Positions 12,075 through 59,671 of a DNA stretch of 64,000 nucleotides are shown piece by piece. The position numbers were made by a program, and so were the translations under genes. Where the stretch lies: positions 233,105 to 297,104 of the IMG/VR virus record IMGVR_UViG_3300025141_000016; one strand, written 5' to 3'. Numbering within the stretch: the first letter of the stretch is position 1; every line of letters begins with the position of its first letter. A model generated the notes under the pieces. The model saw only the letters and a program-made list of their open reading frames with translations, was not told where the DNA came from and made no database searches.

Positions 12075-13097
12075 GTGAATCACCCGGACCCCAAACGAGT
12101 TGCTATCGCTGTGTCTCCGCAGCATCAGGCGGCTCGGGTAGCGGCTCGCTACGCCTCCTCCCCTCTGATAAAGGAGTTGGAGGAAGACTACCATTCCCTC
12201 TGGCATGACAAGCATGAAAGGGAGGACGGAAAGCCTCGGCTGTGCCCACTGAAAGCTGGGGTGCCCGATTGTGAGAAGATGACCCTCAAAGAGTTCGTTG
12301 CCAAGTGGAAGAGGCACGGGCTGAAGGCGGTAAAGGTCCAACGGCTTCCTACCACCTACTCCTACTATGACTGTGGGAGCCACGCCACGCTGCGGACGGA
12401 ACAGATCCATGGCAGCCGACTTTACCCCCAAGGCGACATCACGGTTGACTTGAACACCCCCATTCCTTGGAGCAAGGCGAAGAAAGGCGACTGGGTTCAA
12501 TGGCCATGGCACCACGGAGTGGTGATTGATCCCAAGCGCAAGATTGTGGAGAGTTGTTGGGGGGTAGACGGATGGGTGTTTCAACACCCCGTAGACCTTT
12601 CTACTTATGGGGCGAAGCCTACGGTTCATTCCGTGCATCCAAAAGAGAAGACCAAGACCGCCAGTTCTGATGGTCAGTGTATCGTCGGAGGCCAGTGCTT
12701 CCGCTACGCTGTCATGTGGGATGGCAAAGGCCCAGGATCATCCCCTGACGACATTGTTGTTCACGGGAACGTGCATGGCTTGGTCGGTCCTCACGCCTGG
12801 GTCGAGCGGAAGGACGGTCGCGTATTTGACTGGCAGACGGTTGAGGGGATCTGGGAGACGCTTGGCCGTCAACCTGACCCCAGCTACACCAAGCGCGGCT
12901 GGCCGAAGCGTGAGTTCTACGCGGAGTTCAAGCCGCGCAAGATGAAGCGGTACACCGCCGAAGACGCGCTGATCAACGGGATACGGAACCGGCACTACGG
13001 TCCCTGGGACGCGGATGAGGAGTACCGTCCTCCAATCCGATCAGCATCGCGGGTTGCCGCTCGCTACTTGATGGCTTCTCGGCGGCAACGCCGGTAG
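12075..13097 (+). CDS. Tag-B polyprotein: NlpC/P60-papain-like domain + transglutaminase-like domain
   Basis: YDC..HHGVV..ESCWG..HP..YG domain; KTAS linker; QCFRYA..HAWVE..FDWQ domain; tag B at both ends. Start GTG 12075 after AGGAG. Confidence 0.7.
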   Translation: MNHPDPKRVAIAVSPQHQAARVAARYASSPLIKELEEDYHSLWHDKHEREDGKPRLCPLKAGVPDCEKMTLKEFVAKWKRHGLKAVKVQRLPTTYSYYDCGSHATLRTEQIHGSRLYPQGDITVDLNTPIPWSKAKKGDWVQWPWHHGVVIDPKRKIVESCWGVDGWVFQHPVDLSTYGAKPTVHSVHPKEKTKTASSDGQCIVGGQCFRYAVMWDGKGPGSSPDDIVVHGNVHGLVGPHAWVERKDGRVFDWQTVEGIWETLGRQPDPSYTKRGWPKREFYAEFKPRKMKRYTAEDALINGIRNRHYGPWDADEEYRPPIRSASRVAARYLMASRRQRR

Positions 13098-13106
13098 CTT
13101 CTTTAT
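13092..13106 (+). promoter_or_regulatory. Class I motif, variant
   Basis: CGGTAG-cttct-TTAT, before 13140. Confidence 0.65.
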
Positions 13107-13139
13107 CTCTCCGATAAGGTCAAGTACCGGAGACAACCC

Positions 13140-13589
13140 ATGTCCAAGACCCTTACTGGATCTGACCGTAAACGCCTCATCCGCCTTGCTTCTACCCTCC
13201 CCACGGGGTCAGATGAGCGGAAGGCTATCCTTGCTGGGCTTCACCATGTCGCCGTCCACAAGACCGCCTCCAAGAAGACCACCCTCTCGGCAGATTTGAA
13301 GTTGAAGGACGGGACCGTGTACGCGAAGGGATCGCGTGCAGAGGTGTTCTTCTCGGAGCGCAACCCCTCCATGTCCGAGGTGGAGATTGAGGGTAGGAAG
13401 ATCAAACTCCGCACGGTCAGTCTCCACAAGTACCTCCGTGGTTTTCCAAAGCCCCCCTCCACGAGAGCCTTGCAGAAGATGGACAGTGAGGCTTCCGGGC
13501 CAACGGTCAGTGGGGTACGCAACGTCGAGATGGACGGCTATGGTCCCGATGGGTCACCCTCGTGGATGCTGGCCATGGGGCTCATCTGA
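13140..13589 (+). CDS. Tag-A protein, unknown cargo domain
   Basis: N-terminal LIRLASTLPTGSDERKAILAGL, then KTAS. Confidence 0.75.
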   Translation: MSKTLTGSDRKRLIRLASTLPTGSDERKAILAGLHHVAVHKTASKKTTLSADLKLKDGTVYAKGSRAEVFFSERNPSMSEVEIEGRKIKLRTVSLHKYLRGFPKPPSTRALQKMDSEASGPTVSGVRNVEMDGYGPDGSPSWMLAMGLI

Positions 13590-13621
13590 CCCTGTGCGCC
13601 TCGGTGGTCGCTCCGTGAAGG

Positions 13622-13636
13622 GGGTCAACCACCTAC
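13622..13636 (+). promoter_or_regulatory. Class I motif, degenerate
   Basis: GGGTCA-accac-CTAC, before 13670. Confidence 0.35.
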
Positions 13637-13669
13637 CGAATGTCCGTAGAGGGCACAACGGAGAATGGT

Positions 13670-14125
13670 ATGAGCGCATCCCCCCAGAAAGTAGCCGAGC
13701 GGTGGGCCTCCGAAGCCAAGTTCTTCCGTGGCCTCCACAGTCGCAACAAGGGCATCTTCTTTCGTGGGGCCAAGAACCCCGGTGCCGGTGGCGGGGCTGG
13801 CTTTGGTGCTCTGGGACGTGGCCTTTATCTCGCGTGGGACAAGGGGATCGCCCAGTTCTTTGCTGACCGAGCCGGGGGTCAGGTATACGCCTACAAGATT
13901 CCGTCCAGCCTCAAACTGCTCGATGCCCAGAGCAGCGAGATGGCGACGATCAAGGAAGGGATGGGATTCAAGCCCTGGCAGTATTCAGACGATCCCATGT
14001 ACGCCGCTGTCGTCACAGCCGAGGTAAAAGACCTTGGATACGACGGGGTGATCTCCGACAAAGCGGCAGATGGCCTTGTCTTGTTCGATCCCCGTAAAGC
14101 GAAGCTGGTGGACCTACCGGAGTGA
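13670..14125 (+). CDS. Tag-B protein with ADP-ribosyltransferase-like domain
   Basis: FFRG..LGRGLYLA..AQFFA..GYDGVI..VLFDP; N-terminal SPQKVAERW. Confidence 0.65.
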   Translation: MSASPQKVAERWASEAKFFRGLHSRNKGIFFRGAKNPGAGGGAGFGALGRGLYLAWDKGIAQFFADRAGGQVYAYKIPSSLKLLDAQSSEMATIKEGMGFKPWQYSDDPMYAAVVTAEVKDLGYDGVISDKAADGLVLFDPRKAKLVDLPE

Positions 14126-15580: not shown

Positions 15581-17017
15581 ATGAATCGCTACGCTGCCGC
15601 TTTGGTTCGTTTGGCGGTATCCCTGCCGTCAGGGAGCCGTGACCGCCGAGTGATCCTTGCTTTGATCAAAGAGGCGGGAGCCCGTGAGGATTTTCTGGCT
15701 CGCTACGAGTTCCTTGGGGGGCTCACCGGCAAGTCGGGTGATCGGGTCAAGAGTGATCTGAAGCAGGGCGACTACGAGCCGTATGTGAAGGCACTTGCCG
15801 CTAATGGCTGGGACGAGGGCACCGCACAGCGCCCCGGAGAGGCCCTTACGTTCGTTGACCCCACGGCCAACATGGGGCTGTGGACGGCTTTGGTGAGGGG
15901 CGGAAACTCGGCCTTGGGCCGTGCCGTGGACGAGGTGGCCAAGTGGCAACCTGCCCTGTCAGGAATCTCTGGTGAGGATGTTGCCCAGGTACTCTCACAC
16001 GGGGGTCAACACTGGCCTGGGATGCGCTTCGACTCTCGCGTGAAGAATGAGAAAGGTGGCTTTGGTGATTATGTCGAGCGCGTGAGCGGCGAGGAGCCCT
16101 ACGCGACTGGAGACAACATCTTCCGGTCTGTCGGGAAGGAACTGAAGTCCAAGAAGTTCAACCTCGCTTTCATTATCAAGAGGTTGATGGGGATTGCCCG
16201 CAACAAGACGAAGGATTGGGTCCGCTCGGTGGATGCCGGGAAGTGGGAGGGACCATTCCCCGAAACCGAGGAAGGCCAGCAGATTGTCCCGAGGGGATAC
16301 ACACCCCCGGACCCTGCTGACATGCTCACCAAGGAGTTGTATCTGAAAGCCATCGATCCCGTGATGAAGCGGGTGTTGGCTGATGCCCCTGCACAGGCTC
16401 GGATTTGGGAGGCTCTGTTGGCTTCCGTCCAGGCCAACAAGAACTTTCTTGGGGTATCCGCGAGAGGAAAGGGGGAGGGTGATGTGACCCTGGAGGGCAC
16501 GAAGTTCCGTCCCTTCATGGAGAAGTATTTTGAGGGGCAGACGGATGAAGACGACAACCCCATCCGAATCCCCACCACCCAGAAGATCGCCGCAAACTTC
16601 CAGAAACTCCTGAAGAAGATGAGGGCTGCGTTGGCGGGTCTTTCCGACGCAGAGTTGGCCAAGGGGCTCCCGAGACAAGACCGTGAGATCCTGAAAGACC
16701 GTGACATAGCGAGTGTCTACTGGTCGGAGGTCCATCGTCGCCGTCGGGCTTTGCTCATTCGTATGGCTTCCACGTTCCCCGTGGGGTCAGAACACCGCAA
16801 GGTGTTGCTCCGGCAGGCATCGGATGTGGGGGCGAAGGACGTGTTGACCGAGAAATCGCTCATCAAGTATTTGAAGGCGACGGGGGATACTGTCTCGGCT
16901 TCAACGCTGGCCTACGGCTTTGGGGGCAACCCCCAGCAACACACGAAGTTCCTTCAGCGGCTTGTGGCCAAGGGTGTGCTTGATAAGGACGGCAAAGAGT
17001 ACAGCCTCGCCCTCTGA
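15581..17017 (+). CDS. Tag-A polyprotein: ECF-sigma-like domain + winged-helix domain
   Basis: Two tag-A copies; GEDVAQ and LMGIARNKTKDWVR resemble ECF region 2; C-terminal wHTH LQRLVAKGVL..YSL. Confidence 0.5.
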   Translation: MNRYAAALVRLAVSLPSGSRDRRVILALIKEAGAREDFLARYEFLGGLTGKSGDRVKSDLKQGDYEPYVKALAANGWDEGTAQRPGEALTFVDPTANMGLWTALVRGGNSALGRAVDEVAKWQPALSGISGEDVAQVLSHGGQHWPGMRFDSRVKNEKGGFGDYVERVSGEEPYATGDNIFRSVGKELKSKKFNLAFIIKRLMGIARNKTKDWVRSVDAGKWEGPFPETEEGQQIVPRGYTPPDPADMLTKELYLKAIDPVMKRVLADAPAQARIWEALLASVQANKNFLGVSARGKGEGDVTLEGTKFRPFMEKYFEGQTDEDDNPIRIPTTQKIAANFQKLLKKMRAALAGLSDAELAKGLPRQDREILKDRDIASVYWSEVHRRRRALLIRMASTFPVGSEHRKVLLRQASDVGAKDVLTEKSLIKYLKATGDTVSASTLAYGFGGNPQQHTKFLQRLVAKGVLDKDGKEYSLAL

Positions 17018-19496: not shown

Positions 19497-19976
19497 ATGT
19501 CTTCCCCCATCCTGATCTTGGAAGGGATTTTCGTCCCGGCAACGTCCTCCGGGGACTCCCTGGTCGTGTCACGGCTTGGGGATCCCGATGCGGATCTCGA
19601 TGAGATCCTTTCTGAGTACGTCGGCAGTGCCGTGGAGGTAAGTCTTCACCACTACCCTGAATCTGTGGACAAGACGCAGCCGGGAGGGGGCTCGTGTCTG
19701 TGGGGTGGCTTTTGCCCGCACGGGCACCGTGAGAACCCAGGGTGGTTGTTCCACCAGAGGCTCACCGGAGAACTGTCCCAGGAGAGTTCGGGGTGGTCCG
19801 TGGGTGGCACGGCGCTTGGGTTCTCCAAGATGCCGGGGCATCGGGGTCGGCTCGTCATCATGGACGTGCAAGCCCTTGAGAGTCCGGCCCCCGATGCTTC
19901 TCCAGACGACCTTATCTGTGAGGCAGGCGACCTTGCGGATCTGCTCACCGAACTTCAGAAGGTGGTGAAACCATGA
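19497..19976 (+). CDS. Hypothetical protein
   Basis: ORF coupled (ATGA) to recD2; class II motif upstream. Confidence 0.65.
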   Translation: MSSPILILEGIFVPATSSGDSLVVSRLGDPDADLDEILSEYVGSAVEVSLHHYPESVDKTQPGGGSCLWGGFCPHGHRENPGWLFHQRLTGELSQESSGWSVGGTALGFSKMPGHRGRLVIMDVQALESPAPDASPDDLICEAGDLADLLTELQKVVKP

Positions 19977-22228
19977 GTGAACAGACATATAGTGGTCGGG
20001 TTTCCTCGGTCATGTTCCAGCGTGAAGATTTCCGCATCGCCAAAATCCTCCTCGATGATGACAACCCCCTCCCGGTAACGGTTGCAGGACACTTCCCCGC
20101 CCAGGCTGTGGACGTGGGGTCATGGGTGTCCTTCGCAGGGAAGTGGGTGAGACACCCCCAGTATGGCAAGCAGTTGAAGGTGACGCGGAGCCCAATCTCC
20201 GTCAACTGGACCGAGGACCGGGTTCTGTCGGCGCTTGCGGCTAACGATGTTGGCCCTCGTCTCCGGCGCAACCTGCTTGATCTCGCCGCAGAAAAAGGAA
20301 CGGAACTCGCAGACCTGTTGGACGGAGGATCCCTCGATGGCCTTGCGGGGTCCGACGAGATCACTCGCCTGTACGTCATCCAACGGTGGCGGGCTTTGCG
20401 TACACAGTTGGATGCAGCCAAGTTTCTCTCGGAGGCTGGGGTTCCCGCACGGGTAATCGGCAAGGTGTGGGGAGCCCTCGGGGATGAACTGGAGGAGAAG
20501 ATCACCGAAGACCCCTGGATTCTGGTCCGTGTAGGGGGGATTTCCTTCAAGGAAGCGGATGAGGTAGCGATGAAGCTGGGGGTTTCCCTCGACAACCCCG
20601 GACGAATCAATGGCGCGGTCCTGACGGCGGTTCAAGAGGTGGCTTCCGACGGGCATGTCTATGCTTCCACGGGGCAGGTCGTGAGAGCGGTTTCACGCTT
20701 GATCCCTGGCCCTGATGTGTCCCCTGAAAAGGTAGCCTCCGCGATTGGAACCCTTGTCACCCACAAGCAGTTGGTTGTGGAGCGTGGGTTTCGCGGTGGG
20801 TTGGTGGCTCTCTACGAGCCCTGGTCGGCCTCCATGGAAAAGGGGTGTGCCGACTTGCTCCACGTTCGACAGACCGAAGCGGTGATGGGCCTTGACCCAG
20901 ATGAAGCGAAGACGGAACTGGAGAAGTGGGCCATCGGCCACAAGGTCACCCTCACCCCTACCCAGATGGATGCCGCTCTCCGCGTGTTGACGGAACCGAT
21001 CTCGGTGCTCACCGGGCTTCCGGGGACCGGGAAGACCACCACCCTACAAGCGGCGGTGGCAATCTTGCGGGAGATGGCGGTCCCCTTTCTCTTGGTGGCT
21101 CCTACGGGGATCGCTGCCAAGCGTTTGTCCACCGTCACCGGAACCAAGGCTGCGACGGTTCATCGGGCTTTCTCGGCCAAGGGGTTTGAGACTCGGGAAC
21201 GTGAAGCTACCTATGTGGGGGTGGTGGGAGACACCGCTGCCAAGGGCAGCACGAATACGAAGGGGGAGGATTGGGGCTATGGCCCGGAGAACCCCCATCC
21301 CGCGCAGGTGGTGATCGTGGATGAGTCCTCGATGCTCGACCTCCACATGCTCTACCGGGTGTTGGGCGGGACGCTGGAAACGTGTCGTCTCGTCTTTGTG
21401 GGTGACCCCTACCAGTTGCCGTCGGTGGGAGCCGGAGATGTTTTGCGTGATCTCGTGTCTTCGGGACGCTTCCCCCACACCCACCTCACCCAGATTTTCC
21501 GTCAGGAAGACACTTCCAGCATCATCACCGCAGCCCACGCTGTTCATGCAGGGAAAACCCCAGACATGGAAGACAGAGATTTCTTGCTAATCCCCGCTGA
21601 TACCGAGGATGAGGCAGCGTTCACCATTCGCGGTATCGCCCAACGCCTCTACGCCAAGCGGGCAAACTTCCAAGTGCTCTCCCCCAGGCATAAGGGTGGT
21701 GCTGGGGTCACGGCTCTGAATGAGTTGCTGCGGATGGCGCTCAACCCCCCTACCCCTGGACTTGCCGAGCGCAGGATCATGGGGGATGTGATTCGGGAAG
21801 GGGACCGCATCATGGTCGTCAGGAACGACTATGAGCATGGGGTGTTCAACGGGGACATAGGGAAGATTAGCCGCATCGACCACCGAGCCAAAGAGTTGGA
21901 GATCAAGGTGTTTGGTGGGGAGATGGACAGGATGGTGCGCTACAACGTGGCGAAGCACACACCTCCGATTCGGTTGGCATACTGTCAGACCATCCACAAG
22001 TCGCAGGGGCAGGAGTACGACGTGATCGTCGTTCCTATGTTCCCGTCATTCGGAAGGCAGCTTCAACGGAACCTGCTCTACACCGCAATCACCCGAGCGA
22101 AGAAGCGGGTGTTCATCGTTGGGTCTGCCGCTGCCGTGAGTAAGGCAGTCGCCAATGATAGGGCTGACCGGCGTAATACTCTCCTGGCTGATCGTATCGG
22201 GGCTCTCTGTGGTGCTTCCGAGGAGTGA
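19973..22228 (+). CDS. recD2: RecD2-type SF1B helicase
   Basis: N-terminal OB fold (HPQYGKQ), HhH, GLPGTGKTT, APTGIAA, VDESSM, GDPYQLPSVG, TIHKSQG, YTAITRA. Confidence 0.95.
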   Translation: MSEQTYSGRVSSVMFQREDFRIAKILLDDDNPLPVTVAGHFPAQAVDVGSWVSFAGKWVRHPQYGKQLKVTRSPISVNWTEDRVLSALAANDVGPRLRRNLLDLAAEKGTELADLLDGGSLDGLAGSDEITRLYVIQRWRALRTQLDAAKFLSEAGVPARVIGKVWGALGDELEEKITEDPWILVRVGGISFKEADEVAMKLGVSLDNPGRINGAVLTAVQEVASDGHVYASTGQVVRAVSRLIPGPDVSPEKVASAIGTLVTHKQLVVERGFRGGLVALYEPWSASMEKGCADLLHVRQTEAVMGLDPDEAKTELEKWAIGHKVTLTPTQMDAALRVLTEPISVLTGLPGTGKTTTLQAAVAILREMAVPFLLVAPTGIAAKRLSTVTGTKAATVHRAFSAKGFETREREATYVGVVGDTAAKGSTNTKGEDWGYGPENPHPAQVVIVDESSMLDLHMLYRVLGGTLETCRLVFVGDPYQLPSVGAGDVLRDLVSSGRFPHTHLTQIFRQEDTSSIITAAHAVHAGKTPDMEDRDFLLIPADTEDEAAFTIRGIAQRLYAKRANFQVLSPRHKGGAGVTALNELLRMALNPPTPGLAERRIMGDVIREGDRIMVVRNDYEHGVFNGDIGKISRIDHRAKELEIKVFGGEMDRMVRYNVAKHTPPIRLAYCQTIHKSQGQEYDVIVVPMFPSFGRQLQRNLLYTAITRAKKRVFIVGSAAAVSKAVANDRADRRNTLLADRIGALCGASEE

Positions 22229-22230
22229 GG

Positions 22231-22257
22231 GGGGTTCCCTCTGTTCCTGGGTGGGTA
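22231..22257 (+). promoter_or_regulatory. Class II motif
   Basis: GGGGT-N17-GGGTA, before 22277. Confidence 0.7.
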
Positions 22258-22276
22258 TGAGCGGGGGGAGGTTCCT

Positions 22277-22684
22277 ATGGACCGAAAGACACTCGACAGA
22301 ATCCGAGTGGCCGTCAAGGAGACACGGAGTCGGCTCCGAGTCACCAAGGTCGTGGCTACTCGGGCGGTCAAGACCTCTCGCGGCGAGTTCTTCTGTGGCA
22401 TGTCCGCAGCCTGGGACTCCGTTCAGACCGATGCGGCTGGAGCAACCGACCTTGATCTTGTCCTGGGGACCGCCGAGGAGGCAGCCTCGGGCATGACCAT
22501 CGAGGAAGCGCGGGTTTCGTACCTCCTCCTTTCACTGGAAGCCAGTATCGGAGCGTGGCGGGCCGCTTTGAGTGAGGGGGCGATCACTCCCGAGCAGTTT
22601 GAGGCGAGGGTGCGTGACCTCAAACGCAACACTGTGGCCCATCTGGAGCGCATCTTGCCCCCCGAAACCGATCCCGAGGAATAG
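22277..22684 (+). CDS. Hypothetical protein
   Basis: ORF with RBS and class II motif. Confidence 0.7.
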   Translation: MDRKTLDRIRVAVKETRSRLRVTKVVATRAVKTSRGEFFCGMSAAWDSVQTDAAGATDLDLVLGTAEEAASGMTIEEARVSYLLLSLEASIGAWRAALSEGAITPEQFEARVRDLKRNTVAHLERILPPETDPEE

Positions 22685-23577: not shown

Positions 23578-23586
23578 TGGGGAGGG

Positions 23587-23612
23587 GGGGTGTTTCCTAT
23601 CCCCGTCGGGTA
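23587..23612 (+). promoter_or_regulatory. Class II motif
   Basis: GGGGT-N16-GGGTA, before ssb. Confidence 0.65.
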
Positions 23613-23689
23613 AGACCTCTTGGCGCACAACACCAAACACCGCCGAAACGGCATTGAAATGAACGCGCCTTCACACACTGGAGACTGAC

Positions 23690-50100: not shown

Positions 50101-52606
50101 GGGCTTCGCAGCGGACACCCTGGAGATCGACGTAAGTGCGGACACCAGTGGTCGGCTTGTCCTGACCATGAAACAGGCACCAGTTGATACCACAGGTGCC
50201 ACGCTGGAAGTCGTGAACAACGCGACTCCCGCCGATGACTTCATGGTTCTGGCGGGTTTCGATGCTGATGCAGTAGGAAACGACCAGACGATTCTGGTGA
50301 GTGGTCCTATCGCTACGGAGATCACCAACCTCACGGCAACCACGACGGGCGTGACCCCATACGACCGGATCTGGATCAGGAACCGTATCTGTCCGGGCAA
50401 CGCCCAGACGGCGACTCACCTGACCGATTCCGAGTTCTGTTTGAGTCAGTGTCAGTTGAAGATGCTGGGCGGAACCGGTGCTGGATTCGCGGGCCTGACG
50501 GCCAACGAGCAGGGCTACGCTGGGATCACCGGCACCATGCAGGCACCCACCCTCTTTGGTGAGGTTGGTCTGGCTGGTGGGCAGGACGCATCTGATGATG
50601 TGGTGGTCGAGTTGTTCGCGGACGGTGGAACGACCGATCAGAACAACATCTTCAAGATGACCTTTGAGGGTGAGCCCATCACCATCGAGTTCACTGACGG
50701 CGCTGGAGCGGCGATTGCTGCTGGCGGTTCGGCTGATGTTCCTCTGGGACCGCTCACTGACGCGAACAGTATCCTCGGCCAGATCGACGCTGCCATGACG
50801 ACTGCGGGAGTCACTGGCACCGTTGCCCAGGAAGGGTGCGGTATCCGTTTCCGTGGTGGGAGCACGGCTGCTGCCGCTTCCATCGTGATCGGAGATGCGA
50901 ACGCCAACGACGTTCTCGGATTCACCGAGGGCGATGTGGCCTACCGGACTGTTGTTGAGACTGAAGTGGTCGTATCCGCCATGATGGCGGCTTTCGACAA
51001 CTGGACGAACGTCGGTGGTATCGCCAAGACGGTCAACGACGAGGCCAACGCCAAGTACCTGTTCATCGAGAGCATGGGTACGGCAGGGCTCGGGACGCTT
51101 TCCTCTGTGGCCTTTGACGACGCGGCTACGGATTCCGCACTCCGTCCGGGTGTTGGGCTCGGTGTGGCTGTGGGAGACGGTAACGCGGGAGAGGCGGCCA
51201 TCGACGGCTTCTTCGTCACTTCGACGGATACCGTCAATGGTTCGGGAACGGCGAACACCTCCATTCTCAACGCTGGCACGGGCCAGGATGGAAATGTGGG
51301 TGAAACCTACCGTGATCTCGTCACTGGGTTCACAGTCTCCGTCCTTCCACGGGCTGGTGGCGGCTCCTACCCCACTGGTGGAACCATCACCTTCACGGTC
51401 AGGGAGAATGTGACCACCGACAGCAACCTGCCGGTGAACACGATTCCTGGCCTGGAACTGACGGTCAGCAACACGTCCGGGGTTGTCGCCGGAGATACGG
51501 CGGTTGTCTCTACCTACGAAAAGGGTGGAAATCAGCCGAGCGTTGGGGATGTGTACTACGTCTCCTACGACTACGCGAAGCAGGATTTCAGTGCTGCGCT
51601 GTTCACCAAGTTGTCCTCCATTCAGGCGGCCTACGGGGCGAACAGTCCGAATAACCCTGTCTCGTTGGCATCGTACTTTGCGGTCCTCAACGGTGCTGTT
51701 CTCCTCTCGGTCAAGCAGGTCCAGAAGGACACTGACTCGACGGGAGATGGGGCTTACGACACAGCCAGTGAAACCGCCTTCATCGCGGCCATTGACGACG
51801 TGGAAGGAACGCTTCCGGGCGGTCTGTACCCCGACATGTTGGTGCCCTTGAAGGGAGATAGCCTGACTCTGTTCCAGTATGTCGCCATGCACTGTGACAT
51901 TCAGTCGAGCATCCGCTACCGCGCAGAGCGTACCGCTATCTGCGGATACGGTGCCGGTACGCAGCCTCGGGACGCGGGAACCATCGCGCAGGCGGTGGGT
52001 CGTTCTCGGTTGCGCCTCATGTACCCGGACATCGCCACGTTGAGCCTTTCTCGGGCTGACGGGACGACCGACTCCTACCTTGTGGATGGCACCTACCTCG
52101 CCGCTGCATGGTCTGGAAATCGGGCTTCCCCGAACATCGACGTTGCTACTCCGTGGACGCGGGGACGCATCTTCGGGTTCGATGAACTCGCTCGGACGCT
52201 CGATGCGGTTCAGCAGAATCAGGTCGCTGTGCGCGGTGTGACGATCTTTGGCCAGCGCCAGAGCATCATCGAGTGCCGTCATGGTCTGACCACTGACATG
52301 ACCAACGTGTTGACGAAGACCCCGACCGTGGTGACCATCGCGGATGAGGTTCAGCGTCAGGCGCGGGCGACTCTCGACAAGTTCATTGGAACGAAGTTCC
52401 TGCCGAGTGTCACGGGTCAGATCGAGGGGCAGTTGGCCAACACCTTGAAGAAGCTGGTCCAGGCATCCATCATCAACGCCTTCACGGGAGTTTCTGCGGC
52501 AGTGTCAGCAGATGACCCCACGGTGGCGGAAGTGGAAGCCTACTACCAGCCCATCTTCCCGCTGCTCTACATCGTCGTGACCTTCAATCTGCGAAGCACA
52601 CTGTAG
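47117..52606 (+). CDS. Contractile tail sheath protein with large insertions
   Basis: N-terminal YAPPGVY; C-terminal sheath domain ending YQPIFPLLYIVVTF; 1829 aa. Confidence 0.88.
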   Translation: MAFPGSVYAPPGVYTQTLYEDPIQGLAASVRLPLIIGTGSEELFQTALELIRGSSSSVDQRVVQEDETGRAVVSVSDTGVVTLGNFDGDLTRLQVKNYPIVSGQGTGTTATDAASVNVTLNGAPIVVLAIDGATGILTLSVTPESTDEVKVTYYFNRTDTLITDTLSDQISPDAPEIFGALGENYVVTADVNDTLEFTVDSEDTVSVTITASPVTGWTAAQVATFINAEATGTTLIASTTVDNFGNTVLHLTADRDIVVEDGTCNTTLGLTSAYDTARNKVFYTFQSPIVDGSDGGVTTTDPADVTVKVGGTQVIPTAVDGQTGAITLPFAPETGTTVTCQYYFNSWQDTFDYLAHRGITDITLCGLTPDRSDYIDGADFILKDDKILWGTSTLTAAGTNTAGSTYFDDTQISTSLVDTRQYLAACAAVVDTSVTPPVENRKDFTLPLQPTTGNGRDTPLGASTYAEVANGRLDLPTDRPDLVYAYWGYTVEDALNRGRVEVTKVDSATSQITLRESVPVGASVYATFYYNTLVDGDYTLTSVTAGASGVGTYSIMDENSVSLLTPQFGAKSALLATVTVEFPSGSERTPDCRFEPPFTTTSFTGAVEEDVTIEFAVQDATLAKYAVASAGPYYPVTGASDNLLITLDGTDRTIDLNNPARTGATPAFANPKGFRASVVGDEIVYDAAGFATGTITVGGTPVATTATLLIDGVTLTEQGATGWVNDATVDLTATAIATAINTFVTTVSAVAIGSVVHITAATAGTAGNAIATSSPSGDPAFTFSAATLAGGTVLGTALAITAATNAIDMELDGGLGSAKLVQAQVNAGAGQKAEHIVAAINRAAHGEFGAALGGGAATIILAADASDVDDYYVDWEIKVTAGLAAGEKNTITAYNGTTKVATVTAWAGGAPVITDTYYVYDPDTCPSMTGATRFLNAVTIGTGGFDDIILSYVGAISGVTAITTAAVPIAAATYNTVADLVTAAQTAMDAAITAAGFAADTLEIDVSADTSGRLVLTMKQAPVDTTGATLEVVNNATPADDFMVLAGFDADAVGNDQTILVSGPIATEITNLTATTTGVTPYDRIWIRNRICPGNAQTATHLTDSEFCLSQCQLKMLGGTGAGFAGLTANEQGYAGITGTMQAPTLFGEVGLAGGQDASDDVVVELFADGGTTDQNNIFKMTFEGEPITIEFTDGAGAAIAAGGSADVPLGPLTDANSILGQIDAAMTTAGVTGTVAQEGCGIRFRGGSTAAAASIVIGDANANDVLGFTEGDVAYRTVVETEVVVSAMMAAFDNWTNVGGIAKTVNDEANAKYLFIESMGTAGLGTLSSVAFDDAATDSALRPGVGLGVAVGDGNAGEAAIDGFFVTSTDTVNGSGTANTSILNAGTGQDGNVGETYRDLVTGFTVSVLPRAGGGSYPTGGTITFTVRENVTTDSNLPVNTIPGLELTVSNTSGVVAGDTAVVSTYEKGGNQPSVGDVYYVSYDYAKQDFSAALFTKLSSIQAAYGANSPNNPVSLASYFAVLNGAVLLSVKQVQKDTDSTGDGAYDTASETAFIAAIDDVEGTLPGGLYPDMLVPLKGDSLTLFQYVAMHCDIQSSIRYRAERTAICGYGAGTQPRDAGTIAQAVGRSRLRLMYPDIATLSLSRADGTTDSYLVDGTYLAAAWSGNRASPNIDVATPWTRGRIFGFDELARTLDAVQQNQVAVRGVTIFGQRQSIIECRHGLTTDMTNVLTKTPTVVTIADEVQRQARATLDKFIGTKFLPSVTGQIEGQLANTLKKLVQASIINAFTGVSAAVSADDPTVAEVEAYYQPIFPLLYIVVTFNLRSTL

Positions 52607-52719: not shown

Positions 52720-54150
52720 ATGCCTACCTTCACCTCTGATGATCGCAAGATTCTGGTCCGGTACGCCTCGACGCTGCCCTCCGGGTCGCCGGAGCGGAAG
52801 GCTGTTTTGGCGGGTCTTTCCCTGACTGGTTCCGGTTCCGGTGCTGCAAACGCGAAGTATCTGGACAGCCTGCCCTCTGGCACGAAGGCCAAGATTCTGA
52901 AGAACGTGGCCAAGCATTATGGTGTCTCCGTCTCCGAGATCGAGGACGAACTGACAGATCGGGATGCAGAAGCCCTGTATGAGTACATCGCAAACGACAA
53001 TGCCTTGCGGATGCAGGTTTACCGCGACTTCAAGCAGCAGCGGTTGGCTGCAAGCAAGAACGCTGCCGGATACGCCCGTAAGTCCATGCGTGGGGGAGAC
53101 TACGGAGGGGCTGGGAGCAGCAAGCAGTTGGTGAAGGACATGATTGCCAACATGCGACGGGTGAAGACCAACGCTGAACGAAGCCATGCCGTTGAGCAGG
53201 TGCAGCACGCGGAAGCTGCGAAGTCCATCACCTCCCAACAGGCCAAAGAGGTCATGGGAGCCATTGGTAAGACCGCATCGGCCCGTACCGCCGAGGACTG
53301 GATGGAAGACGCGGTGAAGCGCCCTGGTCGCCTTCACAAGTTCTTCGGTATCCCCGAGGACGAGACGATCCCCATGTCGAAGATCGACGGTGAGATCGCC
53401 AAGTTGAAGAAGAAAGACGACCGCACGAAGGACGAGGAGTCCCTGCTCGATGCCCTCAACCTGGGCAAGACCTTCAAGGAAATGAAGAAGTCGGCTGCGG
53501 GAGAGGAACACTACATCGGGGACGAGGAAGCGGGGGTGTACTGGAGCGTCGATGAAACCCCTCGCGGATGGTTCGTCCAGGCTTGGGTGGATGGTGGTCA
53601 CTTCACACATGACTTCCCGAAGGATGGTCCTTACCCCACCGAAGGGGAAGCCATGGAAGCTGGATGGTCACAAGGGCTTGAATGGGTGGTGACCAACGAT
53701 GTGAGCCTTGCGGGCGAACCCAAGACCTTCCCCGCCTGGGCTCGCAGGAACAGATGGCAGCCTCGCACAGCCTCCTCCGATGATCGCATCGCTCTCATCC
53801 GCTACGCCTCTACCCTTCCTGTGGGGTCAGATGAGCGCAAAGCCATCCTGTCGGGGTTGAAGACTGCTGCCCTTGATTCCGTGTCTCTCGGTGAGATGAT
53901 GGTGTCGGCGGCAGCCCAGGCTCGGCTGTTCTATCGCCTTGACATGAAGCGGTTTGTGGGTGTGTACGAGGAAGTGGGTCAGAATCTTATCCGAATCGGG
54001 CATACCTCTGACCCCGATGACCGTGCGTTCCTTGTCAGCGAGGTCGATAAGGGGCTGGCCGATTTGAAGAAGCACAACATCACCGCTATGTCGGAGGCGT
54101 TGGAGCACATGACCCGTGCCTACGCACTCGTTTCCAAAGCGTATCGCTGA
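52720..54150 (+). CDS. Tag-A polyprotein with about five small modules
   Basis: Two tag-A copies; RLAA, KTAS-ARTA, KSAA, RTAS, KTAA linkers. Confidence 0.75.
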   Translation: MPTFTSDDRKILVRYASTLPSGSPERKAVLAGLSLTGSGSGAANAKYLDSLPSGTKAKILKNVAKHYGVSVSEIEDELTDRDAEALYEYIANDNALRMQVYRDFKQQRLAASKNAAGYARKSMRGGDYGGAGSSKQLVKDMIANMRRVKTNAERSHAVEQVQHAEAAKSITSQQAKEVMGAIGKTASARTAEDWMEDAVKRPGRLHKFFGIPEDETIPMSKIDGEIAKLKKKDDRTKDEESLLDALNLGKTFKEMKKSAAGEEHYIGDEEAGVYWSVDETPRGWFVQAWVDGGHFTHDFPKDGPYPTEGEAMEAGWSQGLEWVVTNDVSLAGEPKTFPAWARRNRWQPRTASSDDRIALIRYASTLPVGSDERKAILSGLKTAALDSVSLGEMMVSAAAQARLFYRLDMKRFVGVYEEVGQNLIRIGHTSDPDDRAFLVSEVDKGLADLKKHNITAMSEALEHMTRAYALVSKAYR

Positions 54151-55403
54151 TGGCTCGACGTACTGCCAAGGCTGATGTGACCCCGGTTCGACAGCGGACC
54201 CAGTACACCTGCATGAGCACCTCCCTGATGATGTGCCTCCAGGCCCTTGGGTACGACGTTGACGAGGATGAGGTCAACAAGGTCATGGGCGCACGTCCCA
54301 TGAAGGGTGCAGCGTGGGAGCAGGCTCTTGCCGCTGCCCAGCACTTCGGAGTCCGAGGAACACTCGTGACCCCTTCGACTGTGCGGCAGTTGAAGGAATG
54401 GACCGACGCGGGCAAGCCCGTGATGATCGCCTGGAATCCCGAGGGTCGAGAGTGGTCACACGCCAGCGTCGTCTTCGACGTGACCCCGTGCAAGGAACAT
54501 GGGTTCGACGTTCATGTCGCTGACCCCAACATCCCTGACCCCGACGAGACAGTCCGGGTCATGCCCAAGTCCGAGTTCTACAAGAAGTGGTACGAGAAGT
54601 GGCCGAACTACTTGGTTCGCCGTCCCGCTCTCATGCTGGACCGGGAGATCACTCCTGATGGTCGTCAGGTGATGGCCTTCAAGAAAGCATCCTCTCGTGG
54701 CTGGGAGAAAACCATCGCTTCTTGGAGCAAGGAGTACAAGACCCCAGAGGGGAAGGTTTTAGGGACCGTGGTTATCGACCGGGGCAAGGTCAACTGGAGG
54801 CCGAACCAGTTGATTGAGGGTTTCGTTCGTCCGCAGGTCATCAGTCGTTCCCGAAGTGGGGAAGAAATCCCCAGTAACGAGAAACTGACCTCTGTGGCAG
54901 ATGCCTGGGTGCGGAAGAACCATGGGAGACAAGTCATGGCTTCCGGTTCCGCTGACCCCAGCCGGGTGGCGGCCAGATATGCCTCGCGCTGTGCCAGTGG
55001 GGATAAAGCCCTCTGGGCGGGTCGGCGCAAGCCCACTTCCGGGGAAGTGGAATGGGCGAAGAATGCCAAGTGGCAGGATTGGGAGCCGCACCCACTCCCC
55101 GATGACCTCACCAAGTTTTTCAAGCGCACCCCAGATACGATTGAGGTGGGTCTTTCCGAGATCACCCCAATCCGGGCTCGGGAGAAAGGCATCGCTAACG
55201 CCAACCGATTCATGTGGTTGGCGTACTGGGGGAAGATGCCCCGGCGAAAGCCCATTTCGTTGAGAGAAAACGATGACGGCACCTACACCATCCTTGATGG
55301 GAACTCGACCTATGCCAACGCCAAGATGAGTGGGTGGAGACACATGTGGGGTCGAGTTGAAGAGTCCCCCTCTACAACGCGGCTATCGCGGAGGATCCCA
55401 TGA
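54150..55403 (+). CDS. Tag-B polyprotein: C39-like peptidase + unknown + ParB/Srx-like domain
   Basis: RQRTQYTC..SHASVV..VADP; KPI..YTILDGNSTY..GW; ADPSRVAARY. Confidence 0.72.
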   Translation: MARRTAKADVTPVRQRTQYTCMSTSLMMCLQALGYDVDEDEVNKVMGARPMKGAAWEQALAAAQHFGVRGTLVTPSTVRQLKEWTDAGKPVMIAWNPEGREWSHASVVFDVTPCKEHGFDVHVADPNIPDPDETVRVMPKSEFYKKWYEKWPNYLVRRPALMLDREITPDGRQVMAFKKASSRGWEKTIASWSKEYKTPEGKVLGTVVIDRGKVNWRPNQLIEGFVRPQVISRSRSGEEIPSNEKLTSVADAWVRKNHGRQVMASGSADPSRVAARYASRCASGDKALWAGRRKPTSGEVEWAKNAKWQDWEPHPLPDDLTKFFKRTPDTIEVGLSEITPIRAREKGIANANRFMWLAYWGKMPRRKPISLRENDDGTYTILDGNSTYANAKMSGWRHMWGRVEESPSTTRLSRRIP

Positions 55404-56951: not shown

Positions 56952-56976
56952 GATCTCACAGGGATAGAGGTGTTGT

Positions 56977-57558
56977 ATGTCCAAAGTCGTTTCAGCCCAG
57001 GCCCCCTTCACGATGATTGTGGCCACTCTCACGCAGGGTAGCGACCCTTCATTGGGGCCTGCGGGCAACCCGAATGTCTCCCGGCAGACTGTCACCATGC
57101 AGTATTTCCCCGAGATCCCTGTCCCTGGTGGTCCGAACACCAACAACATCCCGTCTGCGAAGGGGGTCACTACCCATCTGGGGAACCTTGCGTACCCTGG
57201 TGCTGGGGGTGCTGTCCGAGCAACGGGAACGATTACGGTTGCGAGTGCCACCTTTCAGGGGCCGACCTCGATTCTCTTGGGGGAGTACATCATCACCTCG
57301 GATGAGCACTACACGGTTGATCCTGTCAGCGTGAACAACACGGCCACTGCGCTTGCCGCAGCCATCGACGCACTCCCAGAATACGCGGCTACCCCAGCGG
57401 GAGCCGTTGTGTCGATCAGTGGGCTTATCGGACCCCAGGGGAACATGGAAGTCTTCCGGTCAGTTGGTGTGAGTCCTGCCAACTTCACCCTGGCTCCGAC
57501 GGGTGGGGTCATGTCTGGAGCCGAGCCGGTTATCGGACCTATCACTTCAACGCCGTAG
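56977..57558 (+). CDS. Probable virion protein sharing a module with the tail sheath
   Basis: ATGTITV..TATALAAAI..GAVVSI matches a sheath insert; class I promoter. Confidence 0.6.
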   Translation: MSKVVSAQAPFTMIVATLTQGSDPSLGPAGNPNVSRQTVTMQYFPEIPVPGGPNTNNIPSAKGVTTHLGNLAYPGAGGAVRATGTITVASATFQGPTSILLGEYIITSDEHYTVDPVSVNNTATALAAAIDALPEYAATPAGAVVSISGLIGPQGNMEVFRSVGVSPANFTLAPTGGVMSGAEPVIGPITSTP

Positions 57559-57566
57559 GGGGGACC

Positions 57567-58256
57567 ATGGGAGCGAAGATGCGCCAGAGCAGGGCCGACC
57601 GTGAGTATATCCTTGGCGCTCTCCCCTCTGGGGTTCGGCGGGTTCAGGTTATCGACGGGTCGGGAAAGCAGGTTTACAAGCGGCCTGATGACGTGGACCT
57701 CATGGCTGATGAGATCGTCCTTTCCAATGACGGCTCCCCCATCGTCATGCGAGGCAAGCCAGGACGGAAGCCCAAGTCACAGTTGGTTCCTGTGAGCCCA
57801 CAGGTTGCGGAAGTGAGCAAGGCTCGGGGCGAACACATCGACCATGACCTCCTGCGTCGTGAGGCCGAGAAAGACGCGGAAGGCGATGGGGTCATCAACC
57901 GTTTGATCCTGGCGATGGCCGAGGAAGCGGCTGCCATCGAGTTTGAGCGAGAGGAAGCTGGTCGTCATGGCCAGGACACCACGAACCACTCCGCGAAAAG
58001 GGCTCGTATCCTCAAAGGGATGGCAGACACTTGGTTGAAGCGCAAGCAAACCATGGAAGGGGGTATTGTCGATCTGGACAGCCCTGCTTTCCAGGGCTTG
58101 TTCTCCTTCATCTTGGAGACATTCAAGGAAGCGATGACCGAGGTTGGCTCGCGTCCCGAGTTCGTTGAGACAGTTTTTACGAAGTTGGTCGTTGTGCTGG
58201 CAGATGATCCCTGGAAACAGGAGGCCAAGGCCCGGATGCGGGATAAACTCCGGTGA
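57567..58256 (+). CDS. Hypothetical helical protein
   Basis: ORF in the late operon. Confidence 0.65.
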   Translation: MGAKMRQSRADREYILGALPSGVRRVQVIDGSGKQVYKRPDDVDLMADEIVLSNDGSPIVMRGKPGRKPKSQLVPVSPQVAEVSKARGEHIDHDLLRREAEKDAEGDGVINRLILAMAEEAAAIEFEREEAGRHGQDTTNHSAKRARILKGMADTWLKRKQTMEGGIVDLDSPAFQGLFSFILETFKEAMTEVGSRPEFVETVFTKLVVVLADDPWKQEAKARMRDKLR

Positions 58257-58264
58257 GGTGAACG

Positions 58265-59671
58265 GTGCCAACCAATGTAGTCAAGACACCAGCCGATGAG
58301 AAGAAGTGGGAGAAGGCCAAGGCCCGTGCGAAAGAGCAGGGGAAGGCCGAGAACTATGCCTACATCATGGGCATCTACAAGCAGATGAACCCCGAGAGGT
58401 TCAAGTCAGCCCAGCGGGTCACCGCCCGGTTTCGCGATGAGGACTATGTAGACCTGCTCCAGAGGAAAATCTCCCTAAAGGAGTTCCTCAAAAAGCACCC
58501 CAAGATCAAAGCAGTTGACACCCAACGACTCGATGCCCTGCCGGAAAGCGGATTGTCCAGAGGGTACGACTACGATTGCTTTGTCCATGCAGAACTGCGA
58601 GCCGTCCAGTTGAGCGAAGCCAAATCCTACCGAGAGGTAGACTGGGAACCCATCGGACTCGACGGTGCCGGGGCCAACCCACCCAGAGGAGCCGGGATCC
58701 CGTGGAGTGAGGCCAAGAAAGGGGACTGGGTTCGGTGGCCCGGACTCGGAGGCCATCACGGCGTGGTCATTGACCCCAACCGGAAGATTGTAGAGAGTTG
58801 TTGGGGCTACAAAGGCACCGTGTTCCAGCACCCGGTTGACTACCATCCCTACGGAGGCGGTGGTGAGGTTTTCCCCGTGCGCCCCAAAGTATCAGCCCAG
58901 CGGGTCGCCGCCAGATACGCAGCACAGCTTCCTTTGATGGACCCCCTCTACAACCTGCGGGAAGCCGCCAAGGAACTGCTCTTGCTGGAGGACCATCTGG
59001 GTCATGCCCAGAAGCACTGTCCTGACTGCATCCGTAAACATCTGCTCACCACGGAGGCACTGCTTGAAGAAGCAGTGCGCCTCGACACAGAAGGGGAGAT
59101 GTTGGGGTTGCTCTCACCGCTTCCGGCACAGGTACGGGAACTGTGGACAGCCTATCAAGATGGTCGCCCGGAGCATGAGATCGGGCAAGCCGCCCGTGTT
59201 TTGCGTAAGGGACTCGTAGAGGCTTCCGCCGATGTTCGTGTGGCTGCCCAGGCTGCAAAGCAGGGGAAGTATGCCTACATCATGGGGATCTACAAGGGCA
59301 TGAACCCCAAGGCTTCTGCTTCTAAGGTTGCTGTACGGTACTTGACGGCTCGGATGTCTTCAAAGATACGAAGAGCCATAGCGAAGTGGTACAAGAAAGA
59401 GAAATACACTTCGGAGCTTTATCCTGGATCCTACAAGCACAAGTGGAACAAGGAAAACCACCCGGATGTCTTGGAGAAGCGATTCAACAAGATGTATCGG
59501 GGTTTCGGAGGGGACCAGAGAGAACACTTCGCAACCAAGGTGTTGGACTACTACGAACACCCAAGCTGGGCTCGGGGGTACGAAATCTTGGCGCAAGCGT
59601 GGGAAGATACGGATCGCTACTTCAACGAACCGGTGGAAGATCCAGACCCTTACGACGAGGAGGACTACTAA
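58265..59671 (+). CDS. Tag-B polyprotein including an NlpC/P60-papain-like domain
   Basis: Three tag-B copies, duplicated YAYIMGIYKxMNP, domain paralogous to 12075..13097. Confidence 0.75.
   Translation: MPTNVVKTPADEKKWEKAKARAKEQGKAENYAYIMGIYKQMNPERFKSAQRVTARFRDEDYVDLLQRKISLKEFLKKHPKIKAVDTQRLDALPESGLSRGYDYDCFVHAELRAVQLSEAKSYREVDWEPIGLDGAGANPPRGAGIPWSEAKKGDWVRWPGLGGHHGVVIDPNRKIVESCWGYKGTVFQHPVDYHPYGGGGEVFPVRPKVSAQRVAARYAAQLPLMDPLYNLREAAKELLLLEDHLGHAQKHCPDCIRKHLLTTEALLEEAVRLDTEGEMLGLLSPLPAQVRELWTAYQDGRPEHEIGQAARVLRKGLVEASADVRVAAQAAKQGKYAYIMGIYKGMNPKASASKVAVRYLTARMSSKIRRAIAKWYKKEKYTSELYPGSYKHKWNKENHPDVLEKRFNKMYRGFGGDQREHFATKVLDYYEHPSWARGYEILAQAWEDTDRYFNEPVEDPDPYDEEDY

What the first reader, a model, noticed from the sequence alone, without database searches (positions are those of the whole stretch)
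12279..58855. Same papain/NlpC-like cassette in two different polyproteins 46 kb apart
12279-12611 and 58469-58855 share LKEF..KAV..QRL..YDC..HA.LR..IPWS.AKKGDWV.WP..HHGVVIDP.RKIVESCWG..G.VFQHPVD..YG, while the flanking domains differ completely. This is direct evidence that cargo modules are duplicated and shuffled between tagged genes. A Cys-His catalytic pair is retained in both.
Basis: seen in the sequence. Interest (0 to 1): 0.65.

Follow-up and report, generated by a model that had tools for sequence, protein, structure and literature searches.

The report
Shuffled NlpC/P60 module in megaphage proteins
Two otherwise unrelated multi-part proteins of a giant marine phage carry old copies of one rare cysteine-hydrolase module, bounded by a short peptide tag at which related phages have swapped the neighbouring parts; this is a clear but not unprecedented case of phages mixing enzyme modules.

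Summary
ORF A (12075-13097) and ORF B (58265-59671) share one module of about 125-143 residues (50% identity, E 5e-31). Apart from a 9-residue tag (S-A-S-R-V-A-A-R-Y), nothing else in them is alike.

The module is a rare, divergent member of the NlpC/P60 (papain-like) superfamily. Cys, His and Glu are kept in both copies. They align with the catalytic Cys and His of E. coli MepS, although Pfam's own NlpC/P60 model does not detect the module.

The copies are old: synonymous sites are near saturation. Each type recurs in related metagenomic phages in at least ten other architectures.

In one relative a single gene joins the ORF B leader (80% nt) to the ORF A cassette (83% nt), with the crossover inside the tag. 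A second relative's homology starts at the same base.

The window is the last 64 kb of a 297-kb phage-G-like megaphage contig. The contig carries 26 such tags in 17 proteins (0.8 expected). Several of these hold polyvalent-protein enzymes such as ART and topoisomerase IB.

So module shuffling between tagged genes is supported. "Polyprotein" (cleavage) and "cargo" (packaging) remain untested labels, and the function of the tag is unknown.

The parts
12075..13097 (+). ORF A, 340 aa (GTG start with a GGAG ribosome-binding site about 9 nt upstream). Order of parts: tag, NlpC/P60-like cassette (A type), K-T-A-S linker, second Cys/His/Asp module, C-terminal tag.
   Evidence: (identical to database protein P0010).
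12129..12152 (+). Tag 1 copy (A-A-R-V-A-A-R-Y) in front of cassette A. Homology to two relatives begins here (12128/12129).
12276..12644 (+). Cassette A, the part shared with ORF B. The family profile extends it upstream to about 12171. Putative triad: Cys100 at 12372-12374, His146 at 12510-12512, Glu159 at 12549-12551. Also invariant: His171 at 12585-12587.
12654..12687 (+). Linker (K-T-A-S-S-D-G-Q-C region). In relative L017 this 34-nt stretch occurs twice as a direct repeat flanking a 611-nt extra module.
   Evidence: L017 6142-6691 and 7303-8486 both reach into window 12654-12687.
12681..13040 (+). ORF A second module. Invariant Cys208 (12696-12698), His240 (12792-12794) and Asp252 (12828-12830). 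Its fold is not assigned. It is itself mobile: in relatives it follows an N-terminal tag or an ART-PolyVal domain.
13041..13067 (+). C-terminal tag 1 copy (S-A-S-R-V-A-A-R-Y), 9 residues before the stop codon.
58265..59671 (+). ORF B, 468 aa (GTG start, GAGGTG ribosome-binding site). Order of parts: leader, tag, NlpC/P60-like cassette (B type), tag, helical module, repeat of the leader motif plus tag, C-terminal module.
58265..58405 (+). N-terminal leader with the Y-A-Y-I-M-G-I-Y-K-x-M-N-P motif. In relatives L017/P0011 and P0012 the same leader (80% nt identity) precedes the A-type cassette.
58406..58432 (+). Tag 1 copy (S-A-Q-R-V-T-A-R-F) immediately before cassette B.
58466..58888 (+). Cassette B, the part shared with ORF A. 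The family profile covers 58433-58897. Putative triad: Cys105 at 58577-58579, His164 at 58754-58756, Glu177 at 58793-58795. Also invariant: His189 at 58829-58831.
58892..58918 (+). Tag 1 copy (S-A-Q-R-V-A-A-R-Y) immediately after cassette B. Relative P0006 is near-identical up to this tag and unrelated after it.
59267..59341 (+). Second copy of the leader motif (Y-A-Y-I-M-G-I-Y-K-G-M-N-P) followed by a tag 1 copy (S-A-S-K-V-A-V-R-Y).

Best explanation
ORF A and ORF B are two different multi-module proteins of a phage-G-like marine megaphage. Each contains an anciently diverged copy of one rare module: a divergent NlpC/P60-superfamily cysteine hydrolase with an intact Cys-His-Glu triad. The module is an exchangeable unit bounded by a short conserved peptide tag (consensus A-S-A-S-R-V-A-A-R-Y). 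Related phages carry the same module joined to other partners, and the joints lie in or next to the tag. All of this is shown by sequence comparison. The rest is inferred. (a) The module most likely hydrolyses an amide or peptide bond of the host cell wall, as NlpC/P60 and CHAP domains do in phage tail and virion lysins. It may instead act on another host amide substrate. (b) The tagged proteins are most likely a set of effector enzymes of the 'polyvalent protein' kind. (c) The tag is most likely a short amphipathic helix read by a phage-encoded partner as an address and/or processing signal. It stays with each module because a module without it would not be delivered. This would explain why viable recombinants have their joints at tags.
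For: Shared module and unrelated flanks. NlpC/P60 assignment with catalytic residues in register. Supporting AF2 model (pLDDT 78, Cys at the N-terminus of a helix, His on a strand) and homogeneous NlpC/P60/CHAP structural hits (MepS Z 5.9, rmsd 3.2 over 96 residues; 23 chains at Z>=5). Old divergence. Mosaic relatives: L017 joins the ORF B leader (80% nt, window 58266-58402), the A cassette (83%, 12129-12687), a 611-nt insert and domain 2 (98%, 12654-13837); L018 homology also starts at 12128. At least twelve architectures hold the cassette, including fusions to ParB_N and a PolyA_pol nucleotidyltransferase. The tag is real: 26 strict matches in 17 ORFs against 0.8 in shuffles (maximum 5), unselected flanking positions are conserved (S at -3 and A at -2, 18/26 each), wobble positions vary, and a DNA pattern gives 11 forward, 0 reverse and 0 control hits. 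Tags also sit at the N-termini of single-module proteins and at C-termini. Tagged proteins hold ART-PolyVal (twice), topoisomerase IB with HAD, GNAT, NUDIX and a C39-like peptidase, and several lie between the portal and protease/MCP genes. Five further module pairs are shared among tagged proteins, often starting at a tag.
Against: Pfam NLPC_P60 (PF00877), PHROGs and NCBIfam do not detect the cassette. Foldseek E-values are weak (0.16 and above against PDB, 0.014 against viral models). Z 5.9 is below the level at which a fold match stands on its own. No activity, substrate, packaging or cleavage has been shown. ORF A and ORF B are not in the head module: ORF B follows a probable tail region and ORF A lies among unknown genes. 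The complex prediction of a tag peptide with MCP and protease gave no answer. The closest complete relative by MCP (LR745208.1, 83%) has essentially no tag 1. So the tag system is confined to a narrow clade and its partner is unidentified. The A/B sister relationship is unresolved.
Confidence: 0.7

Rival explanations
1. Simple whole-gene duplication followed by divergence: ORF A and ORF B are paralogous along their whole length.
For: None beyond the shared cassette and tags.
Against: BLASTP finds no similarity outside the cassette and the 9-residue tags. The flanking modules have their own separate homologues and architectures.
Confidence: 0.02
2. The two copies were not duplicated within this genome. 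They were acquired separately from a pool of module variants circulating among related phages, so they are xenologues rather than paralogues.
For: Synonymous sites are near saturation. Both types occur in other phages in other contexts. In the tree the A and B clades are each supported but do not resolve as sisters, and the A type sits on a short branch near P0015.
Against: A and B are more alike (50-55%) than either is to most other family members (31-39%). Both carry the same lineage-specific tag.
Confidence: 0.4
3. The cassette is the processing protease of the system: a papain-like peptidase that cuts the multi-module proteins at or near the tags, in cis or in trans.
For: It has a papain-like fold with an intact triad. 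Tags lie directly on both sides of cassette B. Polyvalent proteins are proposed to carry self-processing peptidases (PMC5512222).
Against: Only 2 of 17 tagged proteins carry it. NlpC/P60 enzymes characteristically cut gamma-glutamyl or amide bonds of cell-wall peptides, not protein backbones (general knowledge). Tags within 4-9 residues of protein termini make poor cleavage sites. Distant homologues of the cassette carry a different border motif.
Confidence: 0.12
4. The tags are cleavage sites of the head-maturation protease, so ORF A and ORF B are true polyproteins cut into single modules inside the procapsid, as in phiKZ or SPN3US head proteins.
For: A head-maturation protease is encoded at genome 19549-21045. 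Tags lie between modules. The small residues S-A-S before R-V-A-A-R-Y recall the Ala|Ser sites of assemblin-type proteases (from memory, a lead only). Extensive head-protein proteolysis is known in giant phages (PMC10052503 abstract; PMC13282480).
Against: The acidic scaffold and the MCP have no tag. Many tags are 4-9 residues from a terminus. Nine conserved residues is long for such a site. The complex prediction gave no answer.
Confidence: 0.25
5. The cassette is a catalytically dead binding module, like the non-catalytic NlpC/P60 protein RipD.
For: RipD appears among the structural matches.
Against: Cys, Glu and the GD and VES motifs are invariant, and the His is nearly invariant, across 19 diverse members.
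Confidence: 0.05

Closest known systems
NlpC/P60 superfamily cysteine hydrolases (E. coli MepS/Spr, mycobacterial RipA/RipB, phage CHAP and tail lysins)
   Same: The order Cys, then His, then a polar third residue. The D-C motif at the start of a helix and the G-D...H-x-G-V-V strand align with the MepS catalytic Cys and His. The best structural matches are all of this family.
   Different: Not detected by Pfam PF00877, PHROGs or NCBIfam. It has its own invariant motifs (I-P-W-x-x-A-K-x-G-D-W and V-E-S-C-W-G...F-Q-H-P). It is very rare: 25 cluster representatives among 1.84 billion proteins. It always sits in phage-like multi-module proteins without a signal peptide or cell-wall-binding domain.
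Polyvalent proteins of phages and conjugative elements (Iyer, Burroughs, Anantharaman, Aravind 2017, PMC5512222)
   Same: Several unrelated enzymatic modules lie in one polypeptide. Hallmark domains (ART-PolyVal, ParB_N) occur in the same tag set or fused to the cassette in relatives. Several such genes sit next to head genes. Domains combine freely.
   Different: No MuF anchor was found, and no zincin-like metallopeptidase appeared in the scanned proteins (Pfam). ORF A and ORF B themselves carry no Pfam hallmark domain. A conserved peptide tag at module borders was not found in that paper (searched for 'linker' and 'cleave') or anywhere in the searchable literature.
Capsid-targeting sequences and processed head proteins (T4 internal proteins and Alt; phiKZ/SPN3US head proteins cut by the prohead protease)
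   Same: A short shared peptide on many otherwise unrelated proteins, including ADP-ribosyltransferases, in a phage with a head protease. The tag lies at the N-terminus of single-module proteins.
   Different: The tag here is 9-10 residues, basic and aromatic, lacks the Glu of the T4 and phiKZ sites (from memory), also occurs internally and at C-termini, and has no shown link to packaging or cleavage.
Polymorphic toxin and effector cassettes marked by conserved junction motifs
   Same: Exchangeable enzymatic cassettes sit behind a conserved junction, and recombination joints lie at the conserved element.
   Different: Those are bacterial secreted toxins with immunity genes. No immunity gene or secretion domain is seen here.

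Membership tests
NlpC/P60 superfamily (papain-like clan) | Catalytic Cys at the N-terminus of a helix, followed by a His on a beta-strand and a polar third residue about 12 residues later | tested here: met
   Cys, His and Glu are invariant or nearly so in 19 members. They align with the MepS D-C and H-V-G motifs. In the AF2 model the Cys starts helix 50-62 and the His lies on strand 110-115.
NlpC/P60 superfamily (papain-like clan) | Alpha+beta papain-like fold similar to solved NlpC/P60 structures | tested here: inconclusive
   All top matches are NlpC/P60 or CHAP, but they are weak: Foldseek E 0.16 and above; VIA Z 5.9, rmsd 3.2, 96 residues; viral library E 0.014. The model pLDDT is 78.
Pfam NLPC_P60 (PF00877) family proper | Score above the curated threshold of the family model | tested here: not met
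   No Pfam hit at E<=1 for either ORF. PF00877 finds nothing in the whole contig at E<=1, although the control genomes respond.
NlpC/P60 superfamily (papain-like clan) | Hydrolysis of cell-wall peptide or amide bonds | not testable with these tools
   No biochemical data. The host is unknown. A peptidoglycan-binding endolysin-like gene at 44719-45543 suggests a bacterial host.
Polyvalent proteins (Iyer et al. 2017) | Two or more unrelated effector-type domains in one phage polypeptide | tested here: met
   ORF A has the cassette plus a second Cys/His/Asp module. ORF B has the cassette plus two other modules.
Polyvalent proteins (Iyer et al. 2017) | Hallmark domains (ART-PolyVal, DdrB-like ParB, MuF, metallopeptidase, etc.) | tested here: inconclusive
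   ORF A and ORF B have none. ART-PolyVal is present in two other tag-1 proteins. ParB_N is fused to the cassette in P0007, below the Pfam cut-off. An ART-PolyVal plus ParB_N protein neighbours the cassette gene in L018. MuF is absent.
Polyvalent proteins (Iyer et al. 2017) | Packaged in the virion and delivered to the host | not testable with these tools
   There is only positional support: several tagged genes lie between the portal and protease/MCP genes.
Viral polyprotein | Proteolytic cleavage into separate mature products at defined sites | not testable with these tools
   No proteomic data. The complex prediction with the protease gave no answer.

The most novel reading that the evidence does not exclude
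The 9-residue tag, and a second longer tag in the same genome, are the address labels of an undescribed loading or processing system in a clade of marine phage-G-like megaphages. Every tag-plus-module unit would be recognised by one phage-encoded partner (scaffold, protease or another hub) and delivered with the genome. Because the label is the only part that must be kept, it would double as the joint at which enzyme modules such as this NlpC/P60 cassette are exchanged between genes and between phages. That would amount to a plug-and-play effector system, comparable in logic to encapsulin cargo peptides or polymorphic-toxin junctions.
Probability: 0.3. Interest if true: 0.8.

Novelty: new variant of a known kind. 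Interest (0 to 1): 0.55.

Why it matters
Domain shuffling in phage multi-enzyme (polyvalent) proteins is known. Here the joints can be read to within a few bases, and they coincide with a conserved peptide tag shared by 17 proteins of one megaphage. If the tag proves to be a loading or processing signal, it would give a sequence rule for predicting which proteins such uncultured giant phages deliver into cells. It could also offer a handle for loading foreign proteins into large capsids. The cassette itself adds a rare, phage-restricted branch to the NlpC/P60 superfamily that standard family models miss.

Tried and rejected
- Pfam, PHROGs and NCBIfam scans of both ORFs and of the bare cassettes found no family.
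- PF00877 and MuF (PF04233) searches of the whole contig found nothing.
- tblastn of the cassette against 50,697 cultured or deposited phage records gave no match. A scan of IMG/VR returned only a second assembly of the same phage, L019.
- Complex prediction with MCP, the protease domain and a 40-residue tag peptide gave no answer (score 0.00). This is no evidence either way.
- ORF A's second module could not be assigned to a fold. The AF2 model has pLDDT 51, too poor for a fold search. Sequence and profile searches of the PDB returned only chance-level rows. The atlas look-alikes scored below 0.9, with YunG-like leads only. Its G-x-C-F-x-Y, P-H-A-W-V-E and R-V-F-D motifs recall transglutaminase-like thiol peptidases, but only from memory.
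- Literature searches for the tag strings, the leader motif and capsid-targeting tags in huge phages found nothing relevant.
- The idea that the tag is a conserved DNA element promoting recombination was rejected as the main explanation. Wobble positions differ among copies.
- A recent intragenomic duplication was rejected.
- The tree could not resolve whether the A and B types are sisters.
- No reads tools were used. No alternative genetic code was needed.


Full report
**Setting**

The window is the last 64 kb of a 297,104-bp IMG/VR viral contig, estimated 67% complete. By inference the genome is roughly 440 kb.

The contig carries a head module:
- large terminase (genome 122-2050)
- portal (2986-4707)
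- head-maturation protease (19549-21045)
- a very acidic scaffold-like protein (21055-22431)
- a 294-residue HK97-type major capsid protein (23342-24226)

The capsid protein is 83% identical to that of the uncultured 485-kb phage LR745208.1. It is 50% identical to that of Tunturiibacter phage Tunturi_5 and 41% to that of Bacillus phage G. The phage therefore belongs to the phage-G-like megaphage lineage. Relatives carrying the cassette come from marine metagenomes, including a Tara Oceans assembly.

**The observation**

The genes are:
- ORF A, 12075-13097, 340 aa. It has a GTG start behind a GGAG ribosome-binding site and is identical to a database protein.
- ORF B, 58265-59671, 468 aa.

BLASTP gives one significant alignment: 71/143 identical, E 5e-31. 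Otherwise only the short tag segments match. The whole contig holds exactly two copies.

At DNA level only about 100 nt are recognisably similar (76%). Third-codon identity at identical residues is 33/69, close to saturation at this GC3. The copies are therefore old. They are not an assembly artefact and not a recent duplication.

**What the cassette is**

Family libraries are silent. An exhaustive profile search of 1.84 billion representatives finds only 25 clusters.

An alignment of 19 members shows these invariant residues: Asp-Cys, Trp, Ala, Gly-Asp, Val-Glu-Ser, Trp-Gly and a late His. Two further His are nearly invariant.

Several lines tie the cassette to NlpC/P60:
- The family profile finds E. 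coli MepS/Spr and an Enterococcus NlpC/P60 domain as its three best PDB sequences (E 0.006-0.025). The family's D-C motif falls on the catalytic Cys, and H-x-G-V-V falls on the catalytic His.
- hhalign against MepS taken from the E. coli K-12 record gives probability 81% and E 1.2e-5 in the same register.
- An AF2 model (pLDDT 78, pTM 0.79) puts the Cys at the start of a helix and the His on a strand.
- The model's best matches are uniformly NlpC/P60 or CHAP. Foldseek against PDB gives RipB, MAP1204, RipA and MepS at E 0.16 and above. VIA-align gives MepS Z 5.9, rmsd 3.2 over 96 residues, with 23 chains at Z>=5. BFVD gives a CHAP protein at E 0.014, then NlpC/P60 endopeptidases and tail lysins.

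Each line is modest, but they agree. I file the cassette as a divergent branch of the NlpC/P60 superfamily, not as a member of the Pfam family proper.

Both window copies keep the triad:
- ORF A: Cys100, His146, Glu159
- ORF B: Cys105, His164, Glu177

**Breakpoints and relatives**

In ORF B the cassette lies exactly between two tags (residues 48-56 and 210-218). In ORF A a tag (residues 19-26) precedes the cassette. A K-T-A-S linker and a second Cys/His/Asp module follow it, and a tag ends the protein.

Relatives show the exchange directly.
- Contig L017 matches the window in three blocks of very different identity. Its bases 6002-6138 match the ORF B leader (58266-58402) at 80%. Bases 6142-6691 match ORF A (12129-12687) at 83%. 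Bases 7303-8486 match 12654-13837 at 98%.
- The switch from B-like to A-like sequence falls inside the tag.
- Between the second and third blocks L017 has 611 nt that the window lacks. This insert is flanked by a 34-nt direct repeat equal to window 12654-12687. That fits either insertion at the linker or deletion between the repeats.
- In the Tara contig L018 homology again begins at 12128. There it follows an unrelated N-terminal module and two tandem tags.

B-type cassettes occur in several other settings:
- P0006 is near-identical up to the second tag and unrelated after it.
- P0007 has the cassette between two tags and fused to a ParB_N-like domain.
- P0009 has it at the N-terminus, followed by a PolyA_pol nucleotidyltransferase.

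More distant members carry the cassette in further architectures. One (P0018) has ORF A's second module upstream of the cassette, which is the reverse order. These distant members have [KR]-[KR]-N-P at module borders instead of tag 1.

A maximum-likelihood tree supports the A and B clades separately but leaves their relationship unresolved. I therefore cannot say whether the two copies arose by duplication in this lineage or were acquired separately.

**The tag system**

A strict pattern for tag 1 matches 26 times in 17 ORFs of the contig. Shuffled proteomes give 0.8 on average and at most 5.

Positions outside the pattern are also conserved: Ser at -3 and Ala at -2 in 18 of 26 copies, and Ser at -1 in 12 of 26. 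Codon wobble positions vary among copies. A degenerate DNA pattern hits 11 times on the coding strand, never on the reverse strand and never in the control. The tag is therefore a protein-level motif.

It occurs between modules, within the first ten residues of several proteins, and within 5-9 residues of some C-termini. Single-module relatives of ORF A's second module begin with it.

Tagged proteins contain:
- topoisomerase IB with a HAD domain
- two ART-PolyVal domains
- GNAT
- NUDIX
- a C39-like peptidase

Several tagged genes lie between the portal and protease genes. Five other module pairs are shared among tagged proteins, often starting at a tag. This domain repertoire and genome position match the polyvalent proteins of Iyer et al. 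(PMC5512222). That paper, and the rest of the searchable literature, does not describe such a tag.

LR745208.1, the nearest complete genome, has essentially no tag 1. Its protease is only 43% identical.

**Mechanism**

Shown:
- one exchangeable NlpC/P60-like module with an intact triad in two unrelated proteins
- recombination joints at the tag

Inferred, with my estimates:
- The module is an active thiol hydrolase (about 0.8). It most likely acts on cell-wall peptide or amide bonds during entry (about 0.4), by analogy with phage CHAP and NlpC/P60 virion lysins.
- The tag is a recognition peptide (about 0.5 overall). It could be an address for loading, a protease site, or both. I lean to an address, because copies a few residues from a terminus make poor cleavage sites, and because neither the scaffold nor the MCP carries one.

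The single complex prediction gave no answer and is not evidence.

**Verdict**

The reading as shuffled NlpC/P60-like modules between tagged genes is supported. "Polyprotein", "cargo" and "duplicated" remain hypotheses.

The case is a new variant of a known kind: polyvalent-type modular phage proteins, here with a conserved junction tag. The cassette itself is a new, rare branch of a known superfamily.

Noticed in passing
window 13140-13589, 15581-17017 (C-terminal part, about 16754), 33819-35057 (two copies), 41909-42244, 46680-47000, 52720-54150 (two copies); also genome 4734-5834 next to the portal gene: A second, longer tag of about 30 residues (D-R-x-x-L-I-R-L-A-S-x-L-P-x-G-S-x-E-R-K-A-I-L-A-G-L, often followed by K-T-A-S) occurs in at least 12 ORFs, mostly at the N-terminus. 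A variant (L-I-R-L-A-H-x-x-P-x-L-R-P-x-L-L-P-L-L) heads ORFs next to the MCP in LR745208.1. No Pfam family and no literature were found.
   Followed up: partly
window 60000-64000, e.g. 60868-61872 (-): GC content falls from about 60% to about 50% and the genes switch to the minus strand. ORF 60868-61872 matches Pfam Volactin, an actin homologue first described in haloarchaea, at E 1.7e-76. An actin-like gene at the end of a megaphage contig may bear on host identity or phage cell biology.
   Followed up: no
window 3-2144 (continues upstream to genome 231505): A 1247-residue protein with three tag-1 copies and an ART-PolyVal domain straddles the window start. It shares modules with three other tagged proteins.
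   Followed up: partly
window 54150-55403: A tag-1 protein with an N-terminal Peptidase_C39-like domain (E 2.3e-8). It lies after a 1829-residue ORF (47117-52606) with a weak DUF2460 (tail-related) hit. This is a second papain-like peptidase in the tag set and a candidate processing enzyme.
   Followed up: no
window 42202-43386: A 394-residue protein with a ferritin-like/Dps-type domain (Pfam E 2.8e-6; PHROG 'DNA binding protein') in a phage late-looking region.
   Followed up: no
L017 6692-7302 and its flanks; window 12654-12687: Relative L017 has a 611-nt extra module between the cassette and the second module. It is flanked by a 34-nt direct repeat that is present once in the window. This is a footprint of module insertion at the linker or of deletion between the repeats.
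   Followed up: partly
proteins P0017, P0018, P0020, P0022, P0026 (distant cassette homologues): Module borders carry [KR]-[KR]-N-P instead of tag 1. In the window, N-P or H-P also precedes several tag-1 copies by 3-6 residues. This was seen by eye only; no statistics were done.
   Followed up: no
genome 9068-9748 (outside the window) and L029 118-798: A conserved 226-residue head-module protein has a tag-like N-terminal segment (S-R-V-A-G...V-R-F) in both this phage and LR745208.1. In this phage it also has a C-terminal tag 1. It could be the evolutionary source of the tag or part of its reader.
   Followed up: no
genome 4734-5834 (outside the window): The protein after the portal gene carries the 22-residue unit beginning G-L-K-T-A-S-T-R-T-R twice and a third G-L-K-T-A-S-T start. 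K-T-A-[SA] is enriched genome-wide: 13 observed against 3.7 in shuffles.
   Followed up: partly
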